Of a DNA stretch of 64,000 nucleotides, positions 48,005-58,409 are shown piece after piece. The stretch is from Convolutriloba macropyga (taxonomy: Eukaryota): the NCBI RefSeq assembly GCF_964194025.1, contig NC_134474.1, forward strand, positions 37,262,001-37,326,000, given 5' to 3'. The notes under the pieces were generated by a model that was given only the letters and a program-made list of their open reading frames with translations, did not search any database and was not told the origin of the DNA. The position numbers and the translations under genes are program-made. Each line of letters opens with the position of its first letter. Positions within the stretch are counted from its first letter, which is position 1.

Positions 48005-48859
48005 TAGAGTTACAAAACAATCGATTTACAGCCTAGCTTGAGAATTGCACACAAGCTCATTGAAAATTAACTCACTTGAAAAGTTGTTCAAAATCAACTG
48101 AACCTAGGATTCAAACTATAACGTCGGTCCAGAAATATAAGACTAGAACAACGGTCGAGAACCCAGTGATACCAAGCACAACAGACAAAAAATTGATCAT
48201 TAGAAAGTTTAGATAGAAATTCCAGCAGATATTACTGTCTGAAAAAGTATTAAGACGACAAACAGTTCATCTAACAAGTCAAGCCAGGAATACAACCAAC
48301 ACCTAACAATTAATTGTATGGTTGATAATGAACAACAAAAATCAAAAAGCAATTCAGTTTACATAAGGAAACATCATTGAAAATCTGAAGAGGTGTCAGA
48401 TAACATCCCGTCAAAATTTTTGACCGTCTTATTTTTATCCCTGGCGGTCGATTATGAGTACACATCGCTTGGAACTCAAGTAGGCTTCTGGTCTTTAACA
48501 GTTTCTGTAACGTCAGAAACTTAATTTATTAATTTCAATGGTAGAAGCAACCGATCTTGTTAACCAACTTAAACATCTATTTGATTAATTTTGACAAATA
48601 GACGAAAACCTGAACATTCATGTAAAAAAATTCAGCTTCACACCTCGTAGACTCAATAAAGGCAATTTACAGTATGAAATATGAGAACCTAAACACAGGC
48701 GTAACATAGGCAAAAAGTTCTCTATCGAGGTATAGTCAAGACGTCATGATTAGAAAAACGCAACCTCTACAATAAATCCAATGAATTCACTATACATTAA
48801 GTTCACAGAACAGATAAATAGATAAAGAACAAAAACTATCCCAAATGGGCACTTTCAAA

Positions 48860-50439: not shown

Positions 50440-50910
50440 ATTCAACACCTCAGACATTTCCGATCATTAATCATAATGAAACCTTTTGACCGGCAATAAT
50501 TTATGAACAAACGAAAAAGAACAGTTCTGAGTCGTCTTAGGCCACCCTCGCTCATTGAGTGATGCGCACTAATCTGATAGACACAGAAACTATTCTTTAT
50601 CACGCTCACCTTCGAGTCGCGCCCATAGAAGGGAAGACCTAAAAAGCAGGCCCAAATCGCCTGCAAAAGAATACCTAATGTTAAAACACAGGCAAAAGAT
50701 TTGCTCAAAGTTAATATGTGTTGTCATCACAGGTGTTGAAAAATAGTTCGTAAAATACAGTTACATATAAAATGACAAAGAATTCAATGATCAAACCGAA
50801 TAAAGGTGTGCATCATTGTGTACCATGACAATCTGTTTTAAAAAAATTGAAATAAATTTTAGCCGTTGACAAAATCAAATAGCTAAATTCAAAAATTATA
50901 GAGCTCCAAT
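50440..50910. repeat. Dispersed repeat with conserved hairpin core (copies ~51174, 56430-56895, ~61427, ~62991)
   Basis: GAACAGTTCTGAGTCGTCTTAGGCCACCCTCGCTCATTGAGTGATGCGCACTAATCTGATAGACACAGAAAC recurs five times, with variation, in the same orientation. Confidence 0.8.
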
Positions 50911-51763
50911 TAGTAATAACAACTTCAAAGCGCAAGCACAAATTCAACTCACAGCAGAGATCCATTCTGTAGAGTGAGCACAAAAAAGACTCCAATGCCG
51001 TCGTAAACTTTTTGAGTTATCTTCATGCGCTTCTCTGCTGACCGCCCAACAAAGTACCAAGAATAAAAAATATGAATAGTAGAAAAAAATGGAACACCTC
51101 AGATTTATCAAAATATTCATATTTATCAAACTTAATCTTTTGCCTGAAAAAAGTTTCTTAATACCTAAGTAAAGAACAGTACTGAATCGTCTTAGGTCAC
51201 CCTCGCATTTTGAGCGATGACACTAAGCTGATAGAAACAAACTATTCTGAATCACGCTCCATCATTGAGTCGTGCCCATGAAAGGGAAAAGATGATGAAG
51301 CTTAACAGTTAAACAACAGGCAAAAGATTTGCTTCGAGAATCGTCTCATCAGGGGTGGGCCAAAAAACGATAGTCGGGAACAGAATACTATGCAACCAAT
51401 TTTCAGAACTCCACTTAAATTTGGACCTAAGGCGTCATTCAGTGAAAAAGGTAGCTTACGCTGCGATTAAGGGTTTAATTCATGAAACCCTTTACGCTCA
51501 ACAACATTTCGGCTCTTTGCAGCTCGGATTAAAATATTCGAGAATATAGCGTGACCGCGTAGCCAAAATTAAACAGGTAATACACACCTCAGAGCGCTCA
51601 AGCTAAAAAAGAGCTCCAATTGGAAACATTCAAAAAATCAAAGGACAACCTCAAACCGCTGAAAATAAGCATCAGAACTTCAATGAGTCATCCACAGCAT
51701 TCAACACTTAATACTAATTTGGAACACAAACACAACAGACAAAAACCACAACGAACACCTAAT

Positions 51764-51818
51764 TCAGATACTCGCAGGTCGTCATTGCAAATCAGAAGAC
51801 CGTCGTGCTTTTCATCAT
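51764..51818 (-). ncRNA. Box C/D snoRNA, snR73/U35-type, intact singleton
   Basis: ATGATGA AAAG CACGACGGTCT T CTGA tttg CAATGA ... CTGA. Confidence 0.85.
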
Positions 51819-53009
51819 AACCGCTAACAGTAGGACCGAACTAAAGAGAGGGTCGCTGGTCACAAACAATACGAGCCAAATTTGACAAGACACCACTTTT
51901 ATCTCCATTTGCAATAGGAGCACGAAAACATCTTGGATAATTCACAAAAAAACCTTCCGAATGCAAGCAAAGTGAAATCATGATTAAAACGAGAGTAAAA
52001 AATCCAACATAAGAAAATGCAAACCAGATAAACACAAATTACAATAAGCTAACCGTCAAACAGCAATTATTCAAAACACTCAATCATTTCAGGAGCTGTT
52101 ACTGTTTTTATCATATGATGCTTATAAGAACAAAGTTTTAAGAGCGGGCATCTGAAATTGGGCTTTATGGATTTAAACCGTTTCTATTTTTAATTTCGTT
52201 CTTTTTATGAATCGGTTCATTTCAGATTGCTTTCATTAGCAACTGCTGCTTAAAAGTACTTTAGAGCCGAACAAGCAAAGAATGAAACTACCCCAGAAAA
52301 ATCAAATGCCGAAAAAGCGGCAAAATAAGGTAATGCGAAACAAATTTTTATTCGATTAAGTAAAAATTAAACAAAATAGGGCCGCTACAATAGATGGCTG
52401 TTAAGATGAGGGCGGATAGAAAAAAAAATCTGGCGAAATGCTCTCAATCTTTTAAGGTTTTAATTAGCGAAAATCAGACAGGGATAACTCATCAATCAGT
52501 AAACTTAGCTGGCAGATTGCCAGAAAAAAGCTGCAATAGCTTCGTAGATCTGCAGCCTCAAAAAAAAAACAATAAAAAAGACAGACCAAAAAAATTCGTC
52601 TTTTCAATGAAAGCTGATATGTTATATTTTGATTAAAAACCTGTATAAGTTCTTGCTGCCTCTCTCTATTAGCTGCTCTCGAATAACCTTCATTTAGAGT
52701 GACACACGCCCATATGACCTCATCTCTTTGAATTAAAGTAAATAAAAGTCAATTTCAAAGTGAGGAAGTCATTTCTGAGAGTGAGGTAAGTCAAGTGTGA
52801 CCAAAAACTTAATCACGCGCATGAACAAAAAAACTCGCTCCACTAAGAGTTAAAAATGATGTCACACATGCAATTCTGTTGAAATTGCATGAACGAATGA
52901 ACAAAAAGTGGCTGTGACGTCATATGGTCGTAACAAAAATCGTGACGACGAAACAAAAAACCAAGAGAAGGCCGGTAATAGCACCAGCTTTCCCTGTTCG
53001 GCTATTACA

Positions 53010-55255
53010 AATCATTTACCAGTCAAGTCATCATCACCACAACTCTCTACTCAAAAACGAAAGTGAGCTCTTTACACCATGAAACCTCAAACATAAACAT
53101 CAATCTAGAAAGCTTATCTCAGTAGCCTTAAAATTTAAGCAAGAATCAGACAGGGATAACTCATCAATCAGTAAAATCATTTACCAGTAAAGTCATCATC
53201 ATTACAACTCAGTTCTCAAAAAGAAAGTGAGCTCTTTACACCATGAAAACTCAAACATCAATCTAGAAAGCTTATTTCAGTAGCCTTAAAATTTAAACAA
53301 GAATCAGACAGGGATAACTCATCAATCAGTAAAAATCATTTACCAGTAAAGTCATCATCATCATCATCGCAACTCTCTACTCAAAAAAGAAAGCGAGCTC
53401 TTTACACCACGAAAACTCTAACATCAATCTAGAAAGCTTATTTCAGTAGCCTTAAAATTTAAACAAGAATCAGACAGGGATAACTAATCAATCAGTAAAA
53501 ATCATTTACCAGCAAAGTCATCATCATTACAACTCTCTACTCAAAAAAGAAAGTGAGCTCTTTACATCATGAAACCTCAAACATCAATCTAGAAAACTTA
53601 TTTCAGAAGCCTTAAAATTTAAACAGGAGTCAGACAGGGATAACTCATCAATCAGTAAAAATCATTTACCAGTAAAGTCATCATCATCATCATCGCAACT
53701 CTCTACTCAAAAAAGAAAGCGGGCTCTTTACACCATGAAACCTCAAACACCAATCTAGAAAGCTTACTTCAGCAGCCTTAAAATTTAAGCAAGAATCAGA
53801 CAGGGATAACTCATCAATCAGTAAAAATCATTTACCAATAAAAGTAATCATCATCGCAACTCTCTACTCAAAAAAGAAAGCGAGCTCTTTACACCATGAA
53901 ACCTCAAACATCAATCTAGAAAGCTTATTTCAGCAGCCTTAAAAATTAAGCAAGAATCAGACAGGGATAACTCATCAATCAGTAAAAAACATTTACCATT
54001 AAAAGTAATCATCATCACAACTCTCTACTCAAAAAAGAAAGTGAGCTCTTTACACAATGAAACCTCAAACATCAATCTAGAAAGCTTATTTCAGTAGCCT
54101 TAAAATTTAAACAAGAATCAGACAGGGATAACTAATCAATCAGTAAAAATCATTTACCAGCAAAGTCATCATCATCACAACTCCTGTACTCAAAAACGAA
54201 AGTGAGCTCTTTACACCATGAAACCTCAAATTTCAATCTAGAAAACTTATTTCAGTAGCCTTAAAATTTAAACAAGAATCAGACAGGGATAACTCATCAA
54301 TCAGTAAAACTCATTTACCAGTAAAGTATCATCATTAAAACTCTCTACTCAAAAAAGAAAGTGAGCTCTTTACATCATGAAACCTCAAACATCAATCTAG
54401 AAAGCTTATTTCAGAAGCCTTAAAATTTAAACAGGAATCAGACAGGGATAACTCATCAATCAGTAAAAATCATTTACCAGTAAAGTCATCATCATCATCA
54501 TCGCAACTCTCTACTCAAAAAAGAAAGCGAGCTCTTTACACCATGAAACCTCAAACATCAATCTAGAAAGCTTATTTCAGCAGCCTTAAAATTTAAGCCA
54601 GAATCAGACAGGGATAACTCATCAATCAGTAAAAATCATTTACCAGTAAAAGTAATCATCATCGCAACTCTCTTCTCAAAAAAGAAAGCGAGCTCTTTAC
54701 AGCATGAAACCTCAAACATCAATCTAGAAAGCTTATTCCAGCAGCCTTAAAATTTAAGCAAGAATCAGACAGGGATAACTCATCAATCAGTAAAAATCAT
54801 TTACCAGTAAAAGTAATCATCATCACAACTCTCTACTCAAAAAAGAAAGTGAGCTCTTTACACCATGAAACCTCAAACATCAATCTAGAAAGCTTATTTC
54901 AGTAGCCTTAAAATTTAAACAAGAATCAGACAGGGATAACTGATCTATCAGTGAAAGTCATTTACCAGTACAGTCATCATCACAACTCTCAACAGAGGAT
55001 AGTTTAACTCTACACGATCGAACCTCGACATATAATTAAAACTGAAACAAGAATGAGAACTGGATAACTCAAAAATAATTAAAAATCATTTACCAGCACA
55101 GTCACCATCGCTACTCAATTAGGGAGAAACCTCAGTCCTAACTCAATTAAATCATCAGCAGAACTTAATTCAGAAGCCTTAAACTCAAACGAAAATCAGA
55201 CAGGGATAACACATAAATCAGTAAAAAATCGTTAACCATCGCAGTCATCATAATC
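53010..55255 (-). repeat. Tandem array, ~160-bp unit x12 plus 2 diverged units; each unit is one snR38-type snoRNA
   Basis: TCAGACAGGGATAACT at 53146, 53304, 53470, 53630, 53796, 53957, 54118, 54279, 54438, 54604, 54765, 54926 and 55196. Confidence 0.95.
53304..53358 (-). ncRNA. Box C/D snoRNA, snR38/SNORD1-like; representative copy of the 160-bp array
   Basis: All four boxes are canonical: ATGATGA (C) ... CTGA (D') T TGATGA (C', overlapping the guide by 1 nt) GTTATCCCTGT CTGA (D). Confidence 0.92.
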
Positions 55256-57295
55256 CTATACAGAAACAAAAATTAAGAGCTATTAATAATTCAACGTTTA
55301 CCAATAAATTTATCTGTTGCCTTTTCTGCGCAATTTCAAGCTTTAAAATTAAATTTCTGCAATCAAAGGTCTCGAAATAATTCACACGCGGTGAATTTTT
55401 ACGATAACAATCATTGCAACCACAAATTTTCATTAAGAAAAATTAACCCTAATGAACATAAAAGGTTTTTAGTGGCACTCTCAAAACAAGTAAACAACCA
55501 AGATTCGACACAAACTTACTTTTGAGTCAAAAGCTGGAAACCAAGAATCTTAATAGAGAACAACATTCGACTGAAACATATCACACACAACCAACCGTAT
55601 TCAAAACTCGGGCAGGCATAAAGGATAATTACCATCATCGCAAAAAAGTTCGAGCTATGTCAATTAGGAAAATTTTGAGAAGTTAGGTCAGCAAGGAGTT
55701 TCACGCCCTTTTTATTCAATCAATTAATTTACAGAAAAAAAACTAACAAAGTTTCTACTGTGGAAGAAATTCAAGCAATGAGGAGACCCAAAACCGAAGA
55801 GACTAGGAGGCGACCACTCCTGAAATGACCACTCTCAAACCTTAAGACGCGTAAATTCTCATATGTGATAATATGTAACATATTCTCATACAACATAAAT
55901 GCGAGGTAACCAAACACCAAAAAGACATGAAAAATAAATAGTCTTAGAGTGATCCGCACTAAATTGAAAGAAACAGAAATTGTTCTGCACCCTCCAAGTT
56001 TTGAGGCGCGGAAGGGGAAAATTGATAGTAAAATTAAATAGACAATCGATTTGTTCAAAGATTTCTAAGCTAAAAAAACATGCAATTTGTTTGTTAAAAT
56101 ATTTGATTTTTTAACTTTCGACTGACCGTTCAAAACGTCACTGATTGCTGCGTCGAGTACGTGACAAAAAAGAGAGTTACAAAAACATTTTCAACGAATT
56201 GGCTGGTCCTGAAATTTAAAACATAACAGACTAACGTGGGCGAATTGCTCTCAAACAACCCCTGAGCGCTTGGCTTCGCCAGTAGATAGCCAAGGTTTAA
56301 TAAGACTAGCTTTAGCTTAATTGAAGGGGCGTGAGGTGAGCGCAGCGGGGGGTGGGGGTGCAACGGTGGGAGTGGAGTCTTTGGCTGCTCGGGGAGCACA
56401 TACAATTTGACTTGAAAAAAAAAAAAAGAGTTCAACATCTCAGACATTTGGGATCTTCAATCATGAAATCTTTTGACCGGCAATAATTTATGAACAAACG
56501 AGCAAAAAAGAACAGTTCTGAGTTGTCTTAGGCCACCCTCGCTCATTGAGTGATGCGCACTAATCTGATAGACACAGAAACTATTCTCTACCACGCTCAC
56601 CTTCGAGTCGTGCCCATAGAAGGGAAGAACTTAAAAGCAGGCTCAATTCGCCTGCAAAAGAATACATAATGTTAAAAAACAGGCAAAAGAATTGCTCAAA
56701 GTTATGATGTGTTGTCTGTTGAGAAATATTTCACGTAAAATAGAGTTACATATAAGATGACAAACAATTCAACGATCAAAACGAATAATGGCGTGCATGA
56801 TTGTGTAACATGACAATCTGTTTAAAAAATTAAAATAAATCTAAGCCGTTGACGGAAACCGACTTGATACATTCAAAAGTTCTAGAGCTCCAATCTACAG
56901 CTTCAGGCGGCGAAATTTTATTCAGAGGACTGTATTTTTGGGATAGGGGTGAAGTGGGGGGAGGGTGTCAAACTTTAAGAACCGCCCTGCACCTCATGAT
57001 TGTACGCATCCCAAAACAGTCTCTGTGAATCGCATACATGGAGACAAGTGAGCTGAATGGCTCTAAGATAACTTAATGCCCTTCGGGCGCTACCTGTTTA
57101 TCCCATTTTTGAGGACCATAAGTCAAATGGGTCAGACAAAAAATCGGTCACGCGAAAAATCGCATATAAAAAGTCCAATGGGACTAATATAATTGCTACA
57201 AACTTCGTTTGAGTGCAATTAAATGCTGTAACTTGATGCGTTCAACTGACCCAAATTTGACAAAACCTAATTCTAATTTTTTTGAATTTTACCGC

Positions 57296-58032: not shown

Positions 58033-58409
58033 TTAGATACACAAAGATTCATATCGAATTTTTCTCCTAATGGTTGCATATGATGATCTATGATGAATAT
58101 ATGTACGCTCCTATTATGCTATATAAAACGTTTAGTGGTTAATAAGACATTACAAACTTGTCCATTCTAAGACGAGGTTGAACTAAGCATGGGCCACTCC
58201 TTCACACCAGGAATTTATGTCTCCTCAACAGTTTTAGTGAATCGCATACTTAGAGACTAGTAACCATGACCAAAGACGTTGTAATCTAAATTTAAAATAT
58301 ATGTCAGGAAATCAGAAGACCGTTGTGTGAATCAAGTCTCAGCTCCTGGGAAGAACAACTTGAATATTTTGAATGACATGGACTAGAACAGTTACCAGGT
58401 GACATAAAA

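What the first reader, a model, noticed from the sequence alone, without database searches (positions are those of the whole stretch)
53010..55255. Minisatellite whose 160-bp monomer is one complete snR38/SNORD1-type snoRNA
Seen: 12 regular units each read C (ATGATGA/GTGATGA) - D' (CTGA) - C' (TGATGA) - AGTTATCCCTGT - D (CTGA) on the minus strand, with ~100 nt spacers. The 16-nt guide+D word is invariant in all 12 units and in the diverged unit at 55196, while the spacers carry substitutions and indels. Inference: selection or very recent homogenisation keeps a head-to-tail snoRNA polycistron, which would need endonucleolytic cutting or micro-exon splicing between units.
Basis: partly seen in the sequence, partly recalled or inferred. 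Interest (0 to 1): 0.85.

Follow-up and report, generated by a model that had tools for sequence, protein, structure and literature searches.

The report
Tandem array of rRNA-methylation guide snoRNAs
A 161-bp repeat in an invertebrate genome carries, in each of 12 intact copies, one small RNA gene that should direct methylation of a universally conserved base next to the ribosome's catalytic centre. The array is real, but no RNA data exist to show how, or whether, the copies are expressed.

Summary
On the minus strand, 53009-54982 is a 161-bp repeat with 12.2 copies. Older decayed units reach 55251, and a 13th unit is split by a high-copy mobile element. All 12 intact units have box C, D', a guide and box D. 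The 12-nt guide is perfectly complementary to this genome's own 28S rRNA. It is identical to the guide of the snR38/SNORD1/snoR38 family, which directs Gm2815 in yeast.

Membership of that family is not shown. Rfam scores are 21-29 bits against a cut-off of 45. The guide also sits at the terminal D box here, not at D' as in the family.

Evidence for selection inside the array is modest (about P = 0.01). The array is young and grew partly by duplication of a block of about 808 bp. Selection is clear across seven diverged backbones in the window, which share only box C, a D' core and the last 15 nt.

Processing is unresolved because the organism has no RNA runs. My best guess (0.4) is that each unit is a roughly 138-nt intron plus a 23-nt non-coding micro-exon. 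The acceptor fits this genome's real introns; the donor is weak. A splicing-independent polycistron (0.3) and a largely inert amplification (0.2) remain open.

The scan noted the surrounding snoRNA supercluster on this same window, not on other DNA.

The parts
53009..54982 (-). Regular tandem array: 161-bp period (158-166), 12 intact units plus the 5' part of a 13th
   Evidence: TRF. Unit alignment and identity matrix. The only such locus in the genome.
53146..54983 (-). Twelve intact box C/D snoRNA genes, 57-64 nt from box C to box D. Layout: C, about 22 nt, D' CTGA, 1 nt, C', 12-nt guide AGTTATCCCTGT, D CTGA.
   Evidence: The guide pairs perfectly with own 28S 2940-2951 and predicts Gm at G2944.
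55196..55251 (-). Older diverged unit u00: box C ATGATGA, D' CTGA, C' lost, 11-nt guide, D CTGA
55054..55111 (-). Dead unit: box C reads ATGGTGA, the guide is mutated (GAGTTATCCAGTT) and box D is lost
53009..53040 (-). 5' part of the 13th unit, which ends inside the D' guide region
   Evidence: A 133-nt contig from a DNA run crosses the junction at 52945-53077 without a difference.
52504..53008 (.). Insertion of about 515 bp from a very high-copy dispersed element that splits the 13th unit
   Evidence: Summed contig depth is about 4x10^5 to 1.5x10^6 here, against 40-100 in unique flanks.
52468..52503 (-). 3' part of the 13th unit: D', C', guide, D and the first flank bases
53076..54884 (-). 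Twelve candidate non-coding micro-exons, one per spacer (inferred). Eleven are 23 nt and one is 29 nt, each lying between TTTCTAG| and |GTAAAG. Spans: 54884-54862, 54723-54701, 54562-54540, 54396-54374, 54237-54215, 54076-54054, 53915-53893, 53754-53732, 53588-53566, 53428-53406, 53262-53240, 53104-53076.
   Evidence: Both motifs lie in invariant blocks of the spacer. Acceptor score is 5.2, inside the range of real sites; donor score is -0.4, below it. No RNA evidence.
55520..55570 (-). Candidate canonical exon just upstream of the array on the same strand (tttcag|...|GTAAGT) (inferred)
56601..56651 (-). Second candidate canonical exon (ttttgcag|...GAAG|GTGAGC). A duplicate lies at 50660-50610 (inferred).

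Best explanation
The region is a young tandem amplification of one compact box C/D snoRNA gene in an invertebrate animal.

Shown or directly readable:
- Each copy carries a guide that would direct fibrillarin to 2'-O-methylate the second G of ACAGGGAUAAC in 28S rRNA. This is G2944 in this genome's numbering.
- That is the site methylated through snR38 in yeast (Gm2815) and through SNORD1 in human.
- The array sits in a supercluster of snoRNA genes that all lie on the minus strand.

Inferred mechanism, to which I commit:
- The cluster is transcribed by RNA polymerase II as a long non-coding host transcript.
- Each 161-bp unit consists of a 23-nt non-coding micro-exon and an intron of about 138 nt. 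The snoRNA begins 35 nt after the 5' splice site GTAAAG and ends 41 nt before the 3' splice site TTTCTAG.
- Splicing releases each intron. Debranching and exonucleolytic trimming down to the assembled snoRNP then give a snoRNA of about 65-75 nt.
- This is a miniature form of the Drosophila Uhg and mammalian SNORD116 layout.
For: Gene identity:
- Boxes and guide are intact in 12 of 12 units.
- The guide is a 12-nt perfect complement to the genome's own 28S. Its last 11 nt plus the adjoining box are identical to the RF00213 consensus.
- snR38 directs Gm2815 (PMC5027498). RF00213 links AtsnoR38Y, human snR38A and yeast snR38 (PMC3511168).

Selection:
- Seven diverged backbones in the window share only ATGATGA, TGAT at D' and the last 15 nt. 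Their interiors are about 51% identical.
- All 40 copies of the guide word in the window are on the minus strand.
- Within the array, the spacer shows 0.29 events per column. That predicts about 4.6 changes in the 16-nt guide plus D, and none is seen (Poisson about 0.01, from the numbers).

RNA polymerase III is unlikely, because each snoRNA contains TTTTT and each spacer contains TTTTTT.

Host-gene layout:
- Canonical exon-like segments lie upstream on the same strand at 56651-56601 and 55570-55520.
- A 14-nt segment between ctctacag| and |GTGAGT lies near 50960, and a 22-nt one between ttcag| and |GTGAGT near 48090.
- Intact paralogues have a pyrimidine-rich AG 41-52 nt after box D. In the copies that lack box C, that AG is mutated.
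- All 12 spacers keep TTTCTAG|ATTG and GTAAAG, and both lie in invariant blocks. The substitutions and a 6-nt insert fall between them.
- In 15 real introns of this genome, 12 acceptors end in TAG and the shortest intron is 116 nt.
- The one-snoRNA-per-intron rule and the Uhg lncRNA hosts in animals are described in PMC1821038 and PMC11014333.
Against: - No RNA run exists for this organism, so neither a small RNA nor splicing is shown.
- The donor candidates are weak. GGT|GTAAAG scores -0.4 and GAG|GTTTCA scores 2.9 on a matrix built from 15 real donors that themselves score 4.0-11.4.
- The only donor-like site in the unit (CTG|GTAAAT, 8.8) lies inside the snoRNA.
- The 41 nt from box D to the 3' splice site is shorter than the roughly 70 nt reported as optimal in vertebrates and flies (PMC8162545, PMC1821038).
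- Three invariant runs of 10-11 nt in a 100-nt spacer are about what chance gives when 24% of columns vary.
- The terminal stem is poor. It is an offset GAGAG/UUCUU helix with two G-U pairs and no covariation.
- The genome holds no retrocopy carrying an exon-exon junction.
Confidence: 0.4

Rival explanations
1. Splicing-independent polycistron. The whole array lies in one long intron or unspliced precursor. Individual snoRNAs are freed by endonucleolytic cuts in the U-rich spacers followed by exonuclease trimming, as in plant, yeast and trypanosomatid snoRNA clusters and the multi-snoRNA introns of Drosophila H/ACA genes.
For: - Spacers of only about 100 nt contain no donor site inside the range of this genome's real donors.
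- All copies lie on one strand with no sign of a promoter per unit.
- The 41 nt between box D and the putative 3' splice site is not the usual animal spacing (PMC1821038).
- Multi-snoRNA introns exist in flies (Huang et al. 2004, listed in the references of PMC5932544).
Against: - The spacer folds no better than shuffled sequence (z = +1.06), so there is no RNase III-type hairpin.
- Acceptor-like and GTAAAG motifs are kept in all 12 spacers.
- Exon-like segments with canonical sites flank the array.
Confidence: 0.3
2. Largely inert recent amplification. An intronic or intergenic snoRNA copy was multiplied by unequal crossing-over. Most copies are not productively processed, and the uniform guide reflects youth, not selection.
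For: - Units are 88-98% identical, and a block of about 808 bp was duplicated recently.
- The share of variable columns is the same in snoRNA and spacer, 25% against 24%.
- One unit is dead, one is broken by a mobile element, and copies lacking box C persist elsewhere in the cluster.
- The window holds 28 further copies of the same guide outside this locus, so the array is redundant.
- The terminal stem is weak.
Against: - There is no change in 16 nt x 12 copies where about 4.6 events are expected (about P = 0.01).
- Box C, D' and D are intact in all 12 units, although the neighbouring old units show what decay looks like.
- The guide is held invariant across seven backbones that are otherwise about 51% identical, so copies at this locus have been under selection over the long term.
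Confidence: 0.2
3. Each unit is an independent gene with its own promoter in the 100-nt spacer, either an RNA polymerase II snRNA-type promoter or an RNA polymerase III promoter.
For: Three invariant spacer blocks of 10-11 nt lie at about -88 to -79, -66 to -56 and -37 to -28 relative to box C.
Against: - T5 inside the snoRNA and T6 in the spacer would terminate RNA polymerase III.
- There is no TATA-like element near -30.
- The blocks are not shared with the other backbones.
- This number of invariant runs is close to the chance expectation.
Confidence: 0.05

Closest known systems
Rfam RF00213 snoR38 (yeast snR38, human SNORD1A-C/snR38A-C, Arabidopsis snoR38Y)
   Same: The antisense element GUUAUCCCUGU abutting a CUGA box is identical. 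It therefore predicts the same target G in the peptidyl-transferase-centre region of LSU rRNA, which is Gm2815 in yeast (PMC5027498; PMC3511168).
   Different: - Scores are only 21-29 bits against the gathering score of 45.
- In the family the guide precedes D' in the 5' half. Here, and in all seven local backbones, it precedes the terminal D box.
- The RNA is shorter, 57-64 nt from C to D against a 91-nt model.

It does the same job, but homology is not shown.
[quoted passage not shown]
   Same: Head-to-tail repeats each carry one box C/D snoRNA on one strand. Those snoRNAs are processed from the introns of a long non-coding transcript (PMC8162545).
   Different: - Those units are of kilobase size (from my own knowledge), their snoRNAs are orphans and their loci are imprinted.
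- This unit is 161 bp, its guide targets a universally conserved rRNA site, and its splicing is not shown.
Drosophila Uhg host genes and the DmSnR60 tandem cluster
   Same: These are invertebrate non-coding hosts with one C/D snoRNA per short intron. They include tandem isoforms made by local duplication (PMC1821038, PMC11014333).
   Different: - The fly snoRNAs lie about 70 nt upstream of the 3' splice site and are present in a few copies.
- Here the distance is 41 nt, there are 12-13 copies, and the putative exons are only 23 nt long with weak donors.
Polycistronic snoRNA clusters of plants, yeast and trypanosomatids
   Same: Many snoRNAs lie on one strand, separated by short U-rich spacers with no promoter for each gene. 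In trypanosomatids the clusters are often tandemly repeated (PMC6562600).
   Different: - Those clusters are in plants, fungi and protists, whereas the host here is an animal.
- No RNase III-type spacer hairpin is present.
- Those clusters usually mix different snoRNAs, while here a single snoRNA is repeated.

Membership tests
Box C/D snoRNA (generic) | Box C RUGAUGA near the 5' end and box D CUGA at the 3' end | tested here: met
   Both are present in 12 of 12 intact units and in u00. Box C is also invariant across seven backbones.
Box C/D snoRNA (generic) | An antisense element of at least 10 nt ending next to box D, pairing with a known 2'-O-methylated rRNA position at the 5th paired nucleotide | tested here: met
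   There are 12 contiguous Watson-Crick pairs with own LSU 2940-2951, and the 5th pair is G2944. 5 of 300 shuffled guides reach the same score. The site equals the RF00213 target.
Box C/D snoRNA (generic) | A terminal 5'/3' stem that brings C and D into a kink-turn | tested here: inconclusive
   Only an offset GAGAG/UUCUU helix with two G-U pairs is found, 3-5 nt away from box C. Fold z-scores are -1.3 and +0.06, and there is no covariation among units.
Box C/D snoRNA (generic) | Accumulates as a stable small RNA bound by fibrillarin, Nop56, Nop58 and Snu13 | not testable with these tools
   No RNA runs for this organism.
Rfam RF00213 snoR38 / snR38 / SNORD1 | Covariance-model score at or above the gathering score (45 bits) | tested here: not met
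   13 matches score 21.1-29.2 bits. None appears at the gathering threshold.
Rfam RF00213 snoR38 / snR38 / SNORD1 | Guide GUUAUCCCUGU directing Gm at the yeast G2815 equivalent | tested here: met
   The guide is identical to the model consensus over the guide and its adjoining CUGA. It is complementary to own 28S.
Rfam RF00213 snoR38 / snR38 / SNORD1 | Guide placed upstream of D' in the 5' half, followed by C' and a separate D box | tested here: not met
   Seven local backbones have box C 54-61 nt upstream and no conserved CUGA downstream, so the CUGA after the guide is the terminal D box. The cmscan alignment had to treat C' as box C.
Tandem intron-encoded snoRNA array in a non-coding host gene (SNORD116 / Uhg type) | Each repeat unit carries one snoRNA | tested here: met
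Tandem intron-encoded snoRNA array in a non-coding host gene (SNORD116 / Uhg type) | Each unit contains an exon bounded by usable splice sites, with the snoRNA inside the intron | tested here: inconclusive
   - The acceptor TTTCTAG scores 5.2; real acceptors score 4.9-12.5, and 12 of 15 end in TAG.
- The donors GTAAAG (-0.4) and GTTTCA (2.9) fall below the real donors at 4.0-11.4.
- The predicted intron of 138 nt is longer than the shortest real intron seen, 116 nt.
Tandem intron-encoded snoRNA array in a non-coding host gene (SNORD116 / Uhg type) | A spliced host transcript exists | not testable with these tools
   There are no RNA runs. The indirect test for a retrocopy with an exon-exon junction was negative.
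Polycistronic snoRNA cluster (plant / yeast / trypanosomatid type) | Several snoRNAs on one strand, separated by short spacers without a promoter for each | tested here: met
   Spacers are 100 nt, all copies are on the minus strand, and no promoter-like element is shared with the paralogues.
Polycistronic snoRNA cluster (plant / yeast / trypanosomatid type) | Spacer stem-loops that serve as RNase III (Rnt1-type) cleavage sites | tested here: not met
   The spacer's minimum free energy is -17.6 kcal/mol against -21.0 for shuffles, z = +1.06. A two-unit fold gives z = +1.10.

The most novel reading that the evidence does not exclude
The 161-bp unit is a complete miniature host-gene module: a 23-nt non-coding micro-exon plus an intron of about 138 nt that holds one snoRNA. 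Iterated 12-13 times, it would to my knowledge be the most compact tandem snoRNA host gene described. Unlike the mammalian imprinted arrays, it would multiply a guide for a universally conserved methylation at the peptidyl-transferase centre. Together with the surrounding cluster, that points to dosage amplification of ribosome-core modification guides in an invertebrate.
Probability: 0.35. Interest if true: 0.65.

Novelty: new variant of a known kind. Interest (0 to 1): 0.5.

Why it matters
Tandem snoRNA arrays in animals are known mainly from the imprinted mammalian loci, whose snoRNAs are orphans, and from a few small fly clusters. This array is different in two ways. It multiplies a housekeeping guide for one of the most conserved rRNA methylations, and it does so with a unit barely twice the length of the RNA itself.

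If the copies are expressed, the locus is a natural test of three questions. How short can an exon-intron-snoRNA module be? Do animals also process box C/D polycistrons without splicing? Is snoRNA gene dosage tuned by local amplification?

The locus also shows birth-and-death evolution in one place. Intact, TE-broken and decayed copies lie side by side, and a block duplication is still visible.

Tried and rejected
- Rfam at gathering thresholds found nothing in the window. In E-value mode it found only sub-threshold snoR38 hits.
- I considered two other boundary models for the snoRNA. In one, C' is the real box C and a CTGA 23 nt downstream is box D, as in the cmscan alignment. In the other, the upstream box C pairs with that downstream D. 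I rejected both for two reasons. The internal box degenerates in 3 of the 12 array units and in the diverged unit u00, as a C' box would. None of the other backbones has a conserved downstream CTGA.
- Two searches for RNA runs returned only DNA holders from one study. Laying four of them showed contigs at 40-100x depth. No splice-like joints were listed in the array, and two flanks are high-copy repeats. The runs confirm the DNA but say nothing about expression.
- I searched the genome for retrocopies of a spliced host RNA using both possible exon-exon junctions. One query gave nothing. The other gave one hit with 3 mismatches that proved unrelated.
- The D' guide has no convincing target. Its best match is 12 bp with two G-U pairs at LSU 223-234. 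18 of 300 shuffles do as well, and it is not conserved in u00.
- Folding of the snoRNA, the spacer and two units gave no significant structure.
- The isolated guide-word hit on contig C9 lies antisense inside a 348-aa open reading frame and is probably chance.
- The first rDNA locus I fetched (C20) was a repeat containing only 28S, so I used C426 instead.
- I did not pin down the species. COX1 has 11 in-frame TGA codons and translates cleanly with the invertebrate mitochondrial code.
Full report
**Observation**

Tandem Repeats Finder reports one array at 53009-54982: period 161, 12.2 copies, 90% matches, score 3155.

Read on the minus strand, every unit has the same order of elements:
- box C (A/GTGATGA, next to a variable (GAT)n run)
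- about 22 nt
- CTGA (D')
- 1 nt
- a C'-like hexamer
- AGTTATCCCTGT
- CTGA (D)
- a spacer of about 100 nt

Anchoring on GTTATCCCTGTCTGA gives 12 intact units, with D-box ends from 54926 down to 53146. It also picks up an older unit at 55251-55196. A dead unit with mutated box C, guide and box D lies between them at 55111-55054.

At the 3' end a 13th unit is split. Its 5' part ends at 53009 and its 3' part resumes at 52503. About 515 bp lie in between. That stretch has a summed contig depth near 10^6 in public DNA runs, against 40-100 in unique flanks, so it is a very abundant mobile element.

The array occurs once in the 1.18-Gb assembly. Contigs from public DNA runs cover both of its edges. 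A second individual differs at 10 sites and one indel across 54912-55711. None of those changes touches a box or the guide.

**What each unit encodes**

The 12-nt element is a perfect complement of the genome's own 28S rRNA, LSU 2940-2951 in locus L017. The box D rule (5th paired nucleotide) selects G2944, in the sequence ACAG-G-GAUAAC.

The 11-nt guide GUUAUCCCUGU plus the adjoining CUGA is letter-for-letter the consensus of Rfam RF00213 snoR38. That family joins yeast snR38, human snR38A/SNORD1 and Arabidopsis snoR38Y (PMC3511168). Deleting snR38 removes Gm2815 in yeast (PMC5027498).

So the predicted job is the snR38 job. Family membership is not shown, for three reasons:
- Nothing reaches the gathering score. 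The 13 local hits score 21-29 bits against 45.
- The model could only be aligned by treating C' as box C.
- In the family the guide precedes D', whereas here it precedes the terminal D.

I settled the boundaries by comparing paralogues. The 15-mer occurs 40 times in the window, always on the minus strand, in at least seven different backbones. All of them have ATGATGA 54-61 nt upstream of the box that follows the guide. None shares a downstream CTGA.

The box next to the guide varies in the array (TGATGA in 9 units, TGATTA in 2, AGATCA in 1) and is lost in u00. That is how a C' box behaves, not a C box.

The D' guide has no convincing rRNA target.

**Selection or youth**

24% of spacer columns vary, against 25% of snoRNA columns. 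Most of the snoRNA variation is (GAT)n slippage at box C.

The guide plus D is the longest invariant run, at 16 nt. Fisher's test against the spacer gives 0.04. With 0.29 events per spacer column, about 4.6 events are expected in those 16 columns and none is seen, so the Poisson probability is about 0.01.

The array is young. Units five apart are 96-98% identical (u02/u07, u03/u08, u04/u09, u05/u10), while neighbours are 88-97% identical. This shows that a block of about 808 bp was duplicated.

The strong evidence for purifying selection lies outside the array. Seven backbones have interiors only about 51% identical. They still share box C, a TGAT core at D' and the last 15 nt without a single change.

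Genome-wide the 15-mer has 48 exact hits:
- 40 are in this window.
- 7 sit in a young dispersed repeat that carries its own C-guide-D module.
- 1 lies antisense in a coding frame and is probably chance.

**How the copies could be expressed**

The organism is an invertebrate animal:
- COX1 has 11 in-frame TGA codons and reads cleanly with the invertebrate mitochondrial code.
- The rDNA is eukaryotic, with long ITS regions.

No RNA run exists for this organism, so everything below is inference.

RNA polymerase III is unlikely. Each snoRNA contains T5 and each spacer contains T6.

To judge splice sites, I recovered 15 introns from this genome's myosin genes:
- Acceptors end in TAG in 12 of 15.
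- Donors are GTAAG, GTATG or GTGAG-like, with A at +3 in 11, A at +4 in 11 and G at +5 in 10.
- The shortest intron is 116 nt.

Every one of the 12 spacers keeps TTTCTAG|ATTG and, 23 nt later (29 nt in one spacer), GTAAAG. Both motifs lie in invariant blocks. The substitutions and a 6-nt insert fall between them.

This gives a module with a 23-nt non-coding exon and an intron of about 138 nt. The snoRNA sits 35 nt from the 5' site and 41 nt from the 3' site.

Four observations support this layout:
- Exon-like segments with canonical sites lie just upstream on the same strand, at 56651-56601 and 55570-55520.
- Tiny segments between an AG and GTGAGT occur elsewhere in the cluster, near 50960 and 48090.
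- Intact paralogues carry a pyrimidine-rich AG 41-52 nt after box D. That AG is mutated in the copies that lack box C.
- Animals generally keep one box C/D snoRNA per intron, often in non-coding Uhg-type hosts (PMC1821038, PMC11014333, PMC8162545).

Four observations count against it:
- On a matrix built from the 15 real sites, the acceptor scores 5.2, at the low end of the real range (4.9-12.5).
The only good donor-like site, CTG|GTAAAT at 8.8, lies inside the snoRNA.
- The distance to the 3' site is shorter than the roughly 70 nt reported for vertebrates and flies.
- Three invariant runs of 10-11 nt in a spacer are near the chance expectation, and no retrocopy with an exon-exon junction exists in the genome.

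The main rival is a splicing-independent polycistron or a multi-snoRNA intron. It explains the weak donors. But the spacer folds no better than shuffled sequence (z = +1.06), so an RNase III-type signal is absent.

A third reading is a mostly inert recent amplification. It fits the youth of the array, the redundancy and the broken copies. It fits the in-array constraint and the intact boxes of all 12 units less well.

**Verdict**

- It is a tandem array of box C/D snoRNA genes that do the snR38/SNORD1 job. I hold this with high confidence.
- It is not shown to be homologous to that family.
- It was made by recent unit and block duplication inside a long-lived, selected snoRNA supercluster.
- I put micro-exon splicing per unit at 0.4, splicing-independent processing at 0.3, largely inert copies at 0.2 and a promoter per unit at 0.05.

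Compared with known systems, it is a new variant of the tandem snoRNA array: very compact, in an invertebrate, and carrying a conserved rRNA guide rather than an orphan one.

Earlier notes of this scan describe the surrounding cluster on this same window. I verified part of that context, namely the 40 same-strand guide copies and the singleton paralogues.

Noticed in passing
L020-L024, L026, L027 (G000 C3:46132482, C4:72423713, C5:54559289, C6:66075035, C7:635692, C12:32242643, C4135:7939): A young dispersed repeat carries its own snoRNA-like module with the same guide: GCTGATGA, then 62 nt, then GTTATCCCTGT and CTGA. It has at least 19 copies. Seven are 98-100% identical and lie on different chromosomes. 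It could be a mobile element that captured a snoRNA, or a snoRNA-derived retroposon.
   Followed up: partly
window 52504-53008: An element of about 515 bp is inserted into the 13th array unit. Its summed contig depth in DNA runs is about 10^6, against 40-100 for unique sequence, so it is one of the most abundant repeats of this genome. It begins with an 8-bp inverted repeat (GTAATAGC...GCTATTAC).
   Followed up: partly
window 53146-54983, inside each snoRNA: The best donor-like motif of the whole unit (CTG|GTAAAT, score 8.8 on a matrix from 15 real donors) lies inside the snoRNA's D' guide region. If it were used, the snoRNA would be destroyed.
   Followed up: no
window 53146-54826 (5' end of each snoRNA): Box C overlaps a (GAT)n microsatellite whose length differs between units, from 2 to 5 repeats. 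As a result, the distance between the flanking purine stem and the functional box C varies.
   Followed up: no
window 51764-51818 (-): A single-copy box C/D candidate reads ATGATGA, then ...ACGACGGTCTT + CTGA, then a terminal CTGA. Its guide is complementary to the 28S sequence AGACCGTCGT. The same guide core recurs in the 860-bp cassette (about 31390) and near 58310.
   Followed up: no
window 56601-56651 and 50610-50660 (-), degenerate third copy near 51300: An exon-like segment (ttttgcag|...GAAG|GTGAGC) is duplicated together with about 150 nt of flank. This shows segmental duplication of larger blocks within the cluster.
   Followed up: no
L015 (G000 C20:13500-23400): A tandem repeat with a period of 8,086 bp contains only the 3' two-thirds of 28S rRNA, without 18S or 5.8S. 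The 28S target word has about 600 hits on hundreds of small contigs. A complete rDNA unit (C426) is about 17 kb long, with an ITS1 of about 2.96 kb and an ITS2 of about 1.68 kb.
   Followed up: partly
G000 C13:6185865-6187742: A nuclear copy of mitochondrial COX1 fragments (a NUMT) lies here. The mitochondrial contig itself is C315.
   Followed up: no
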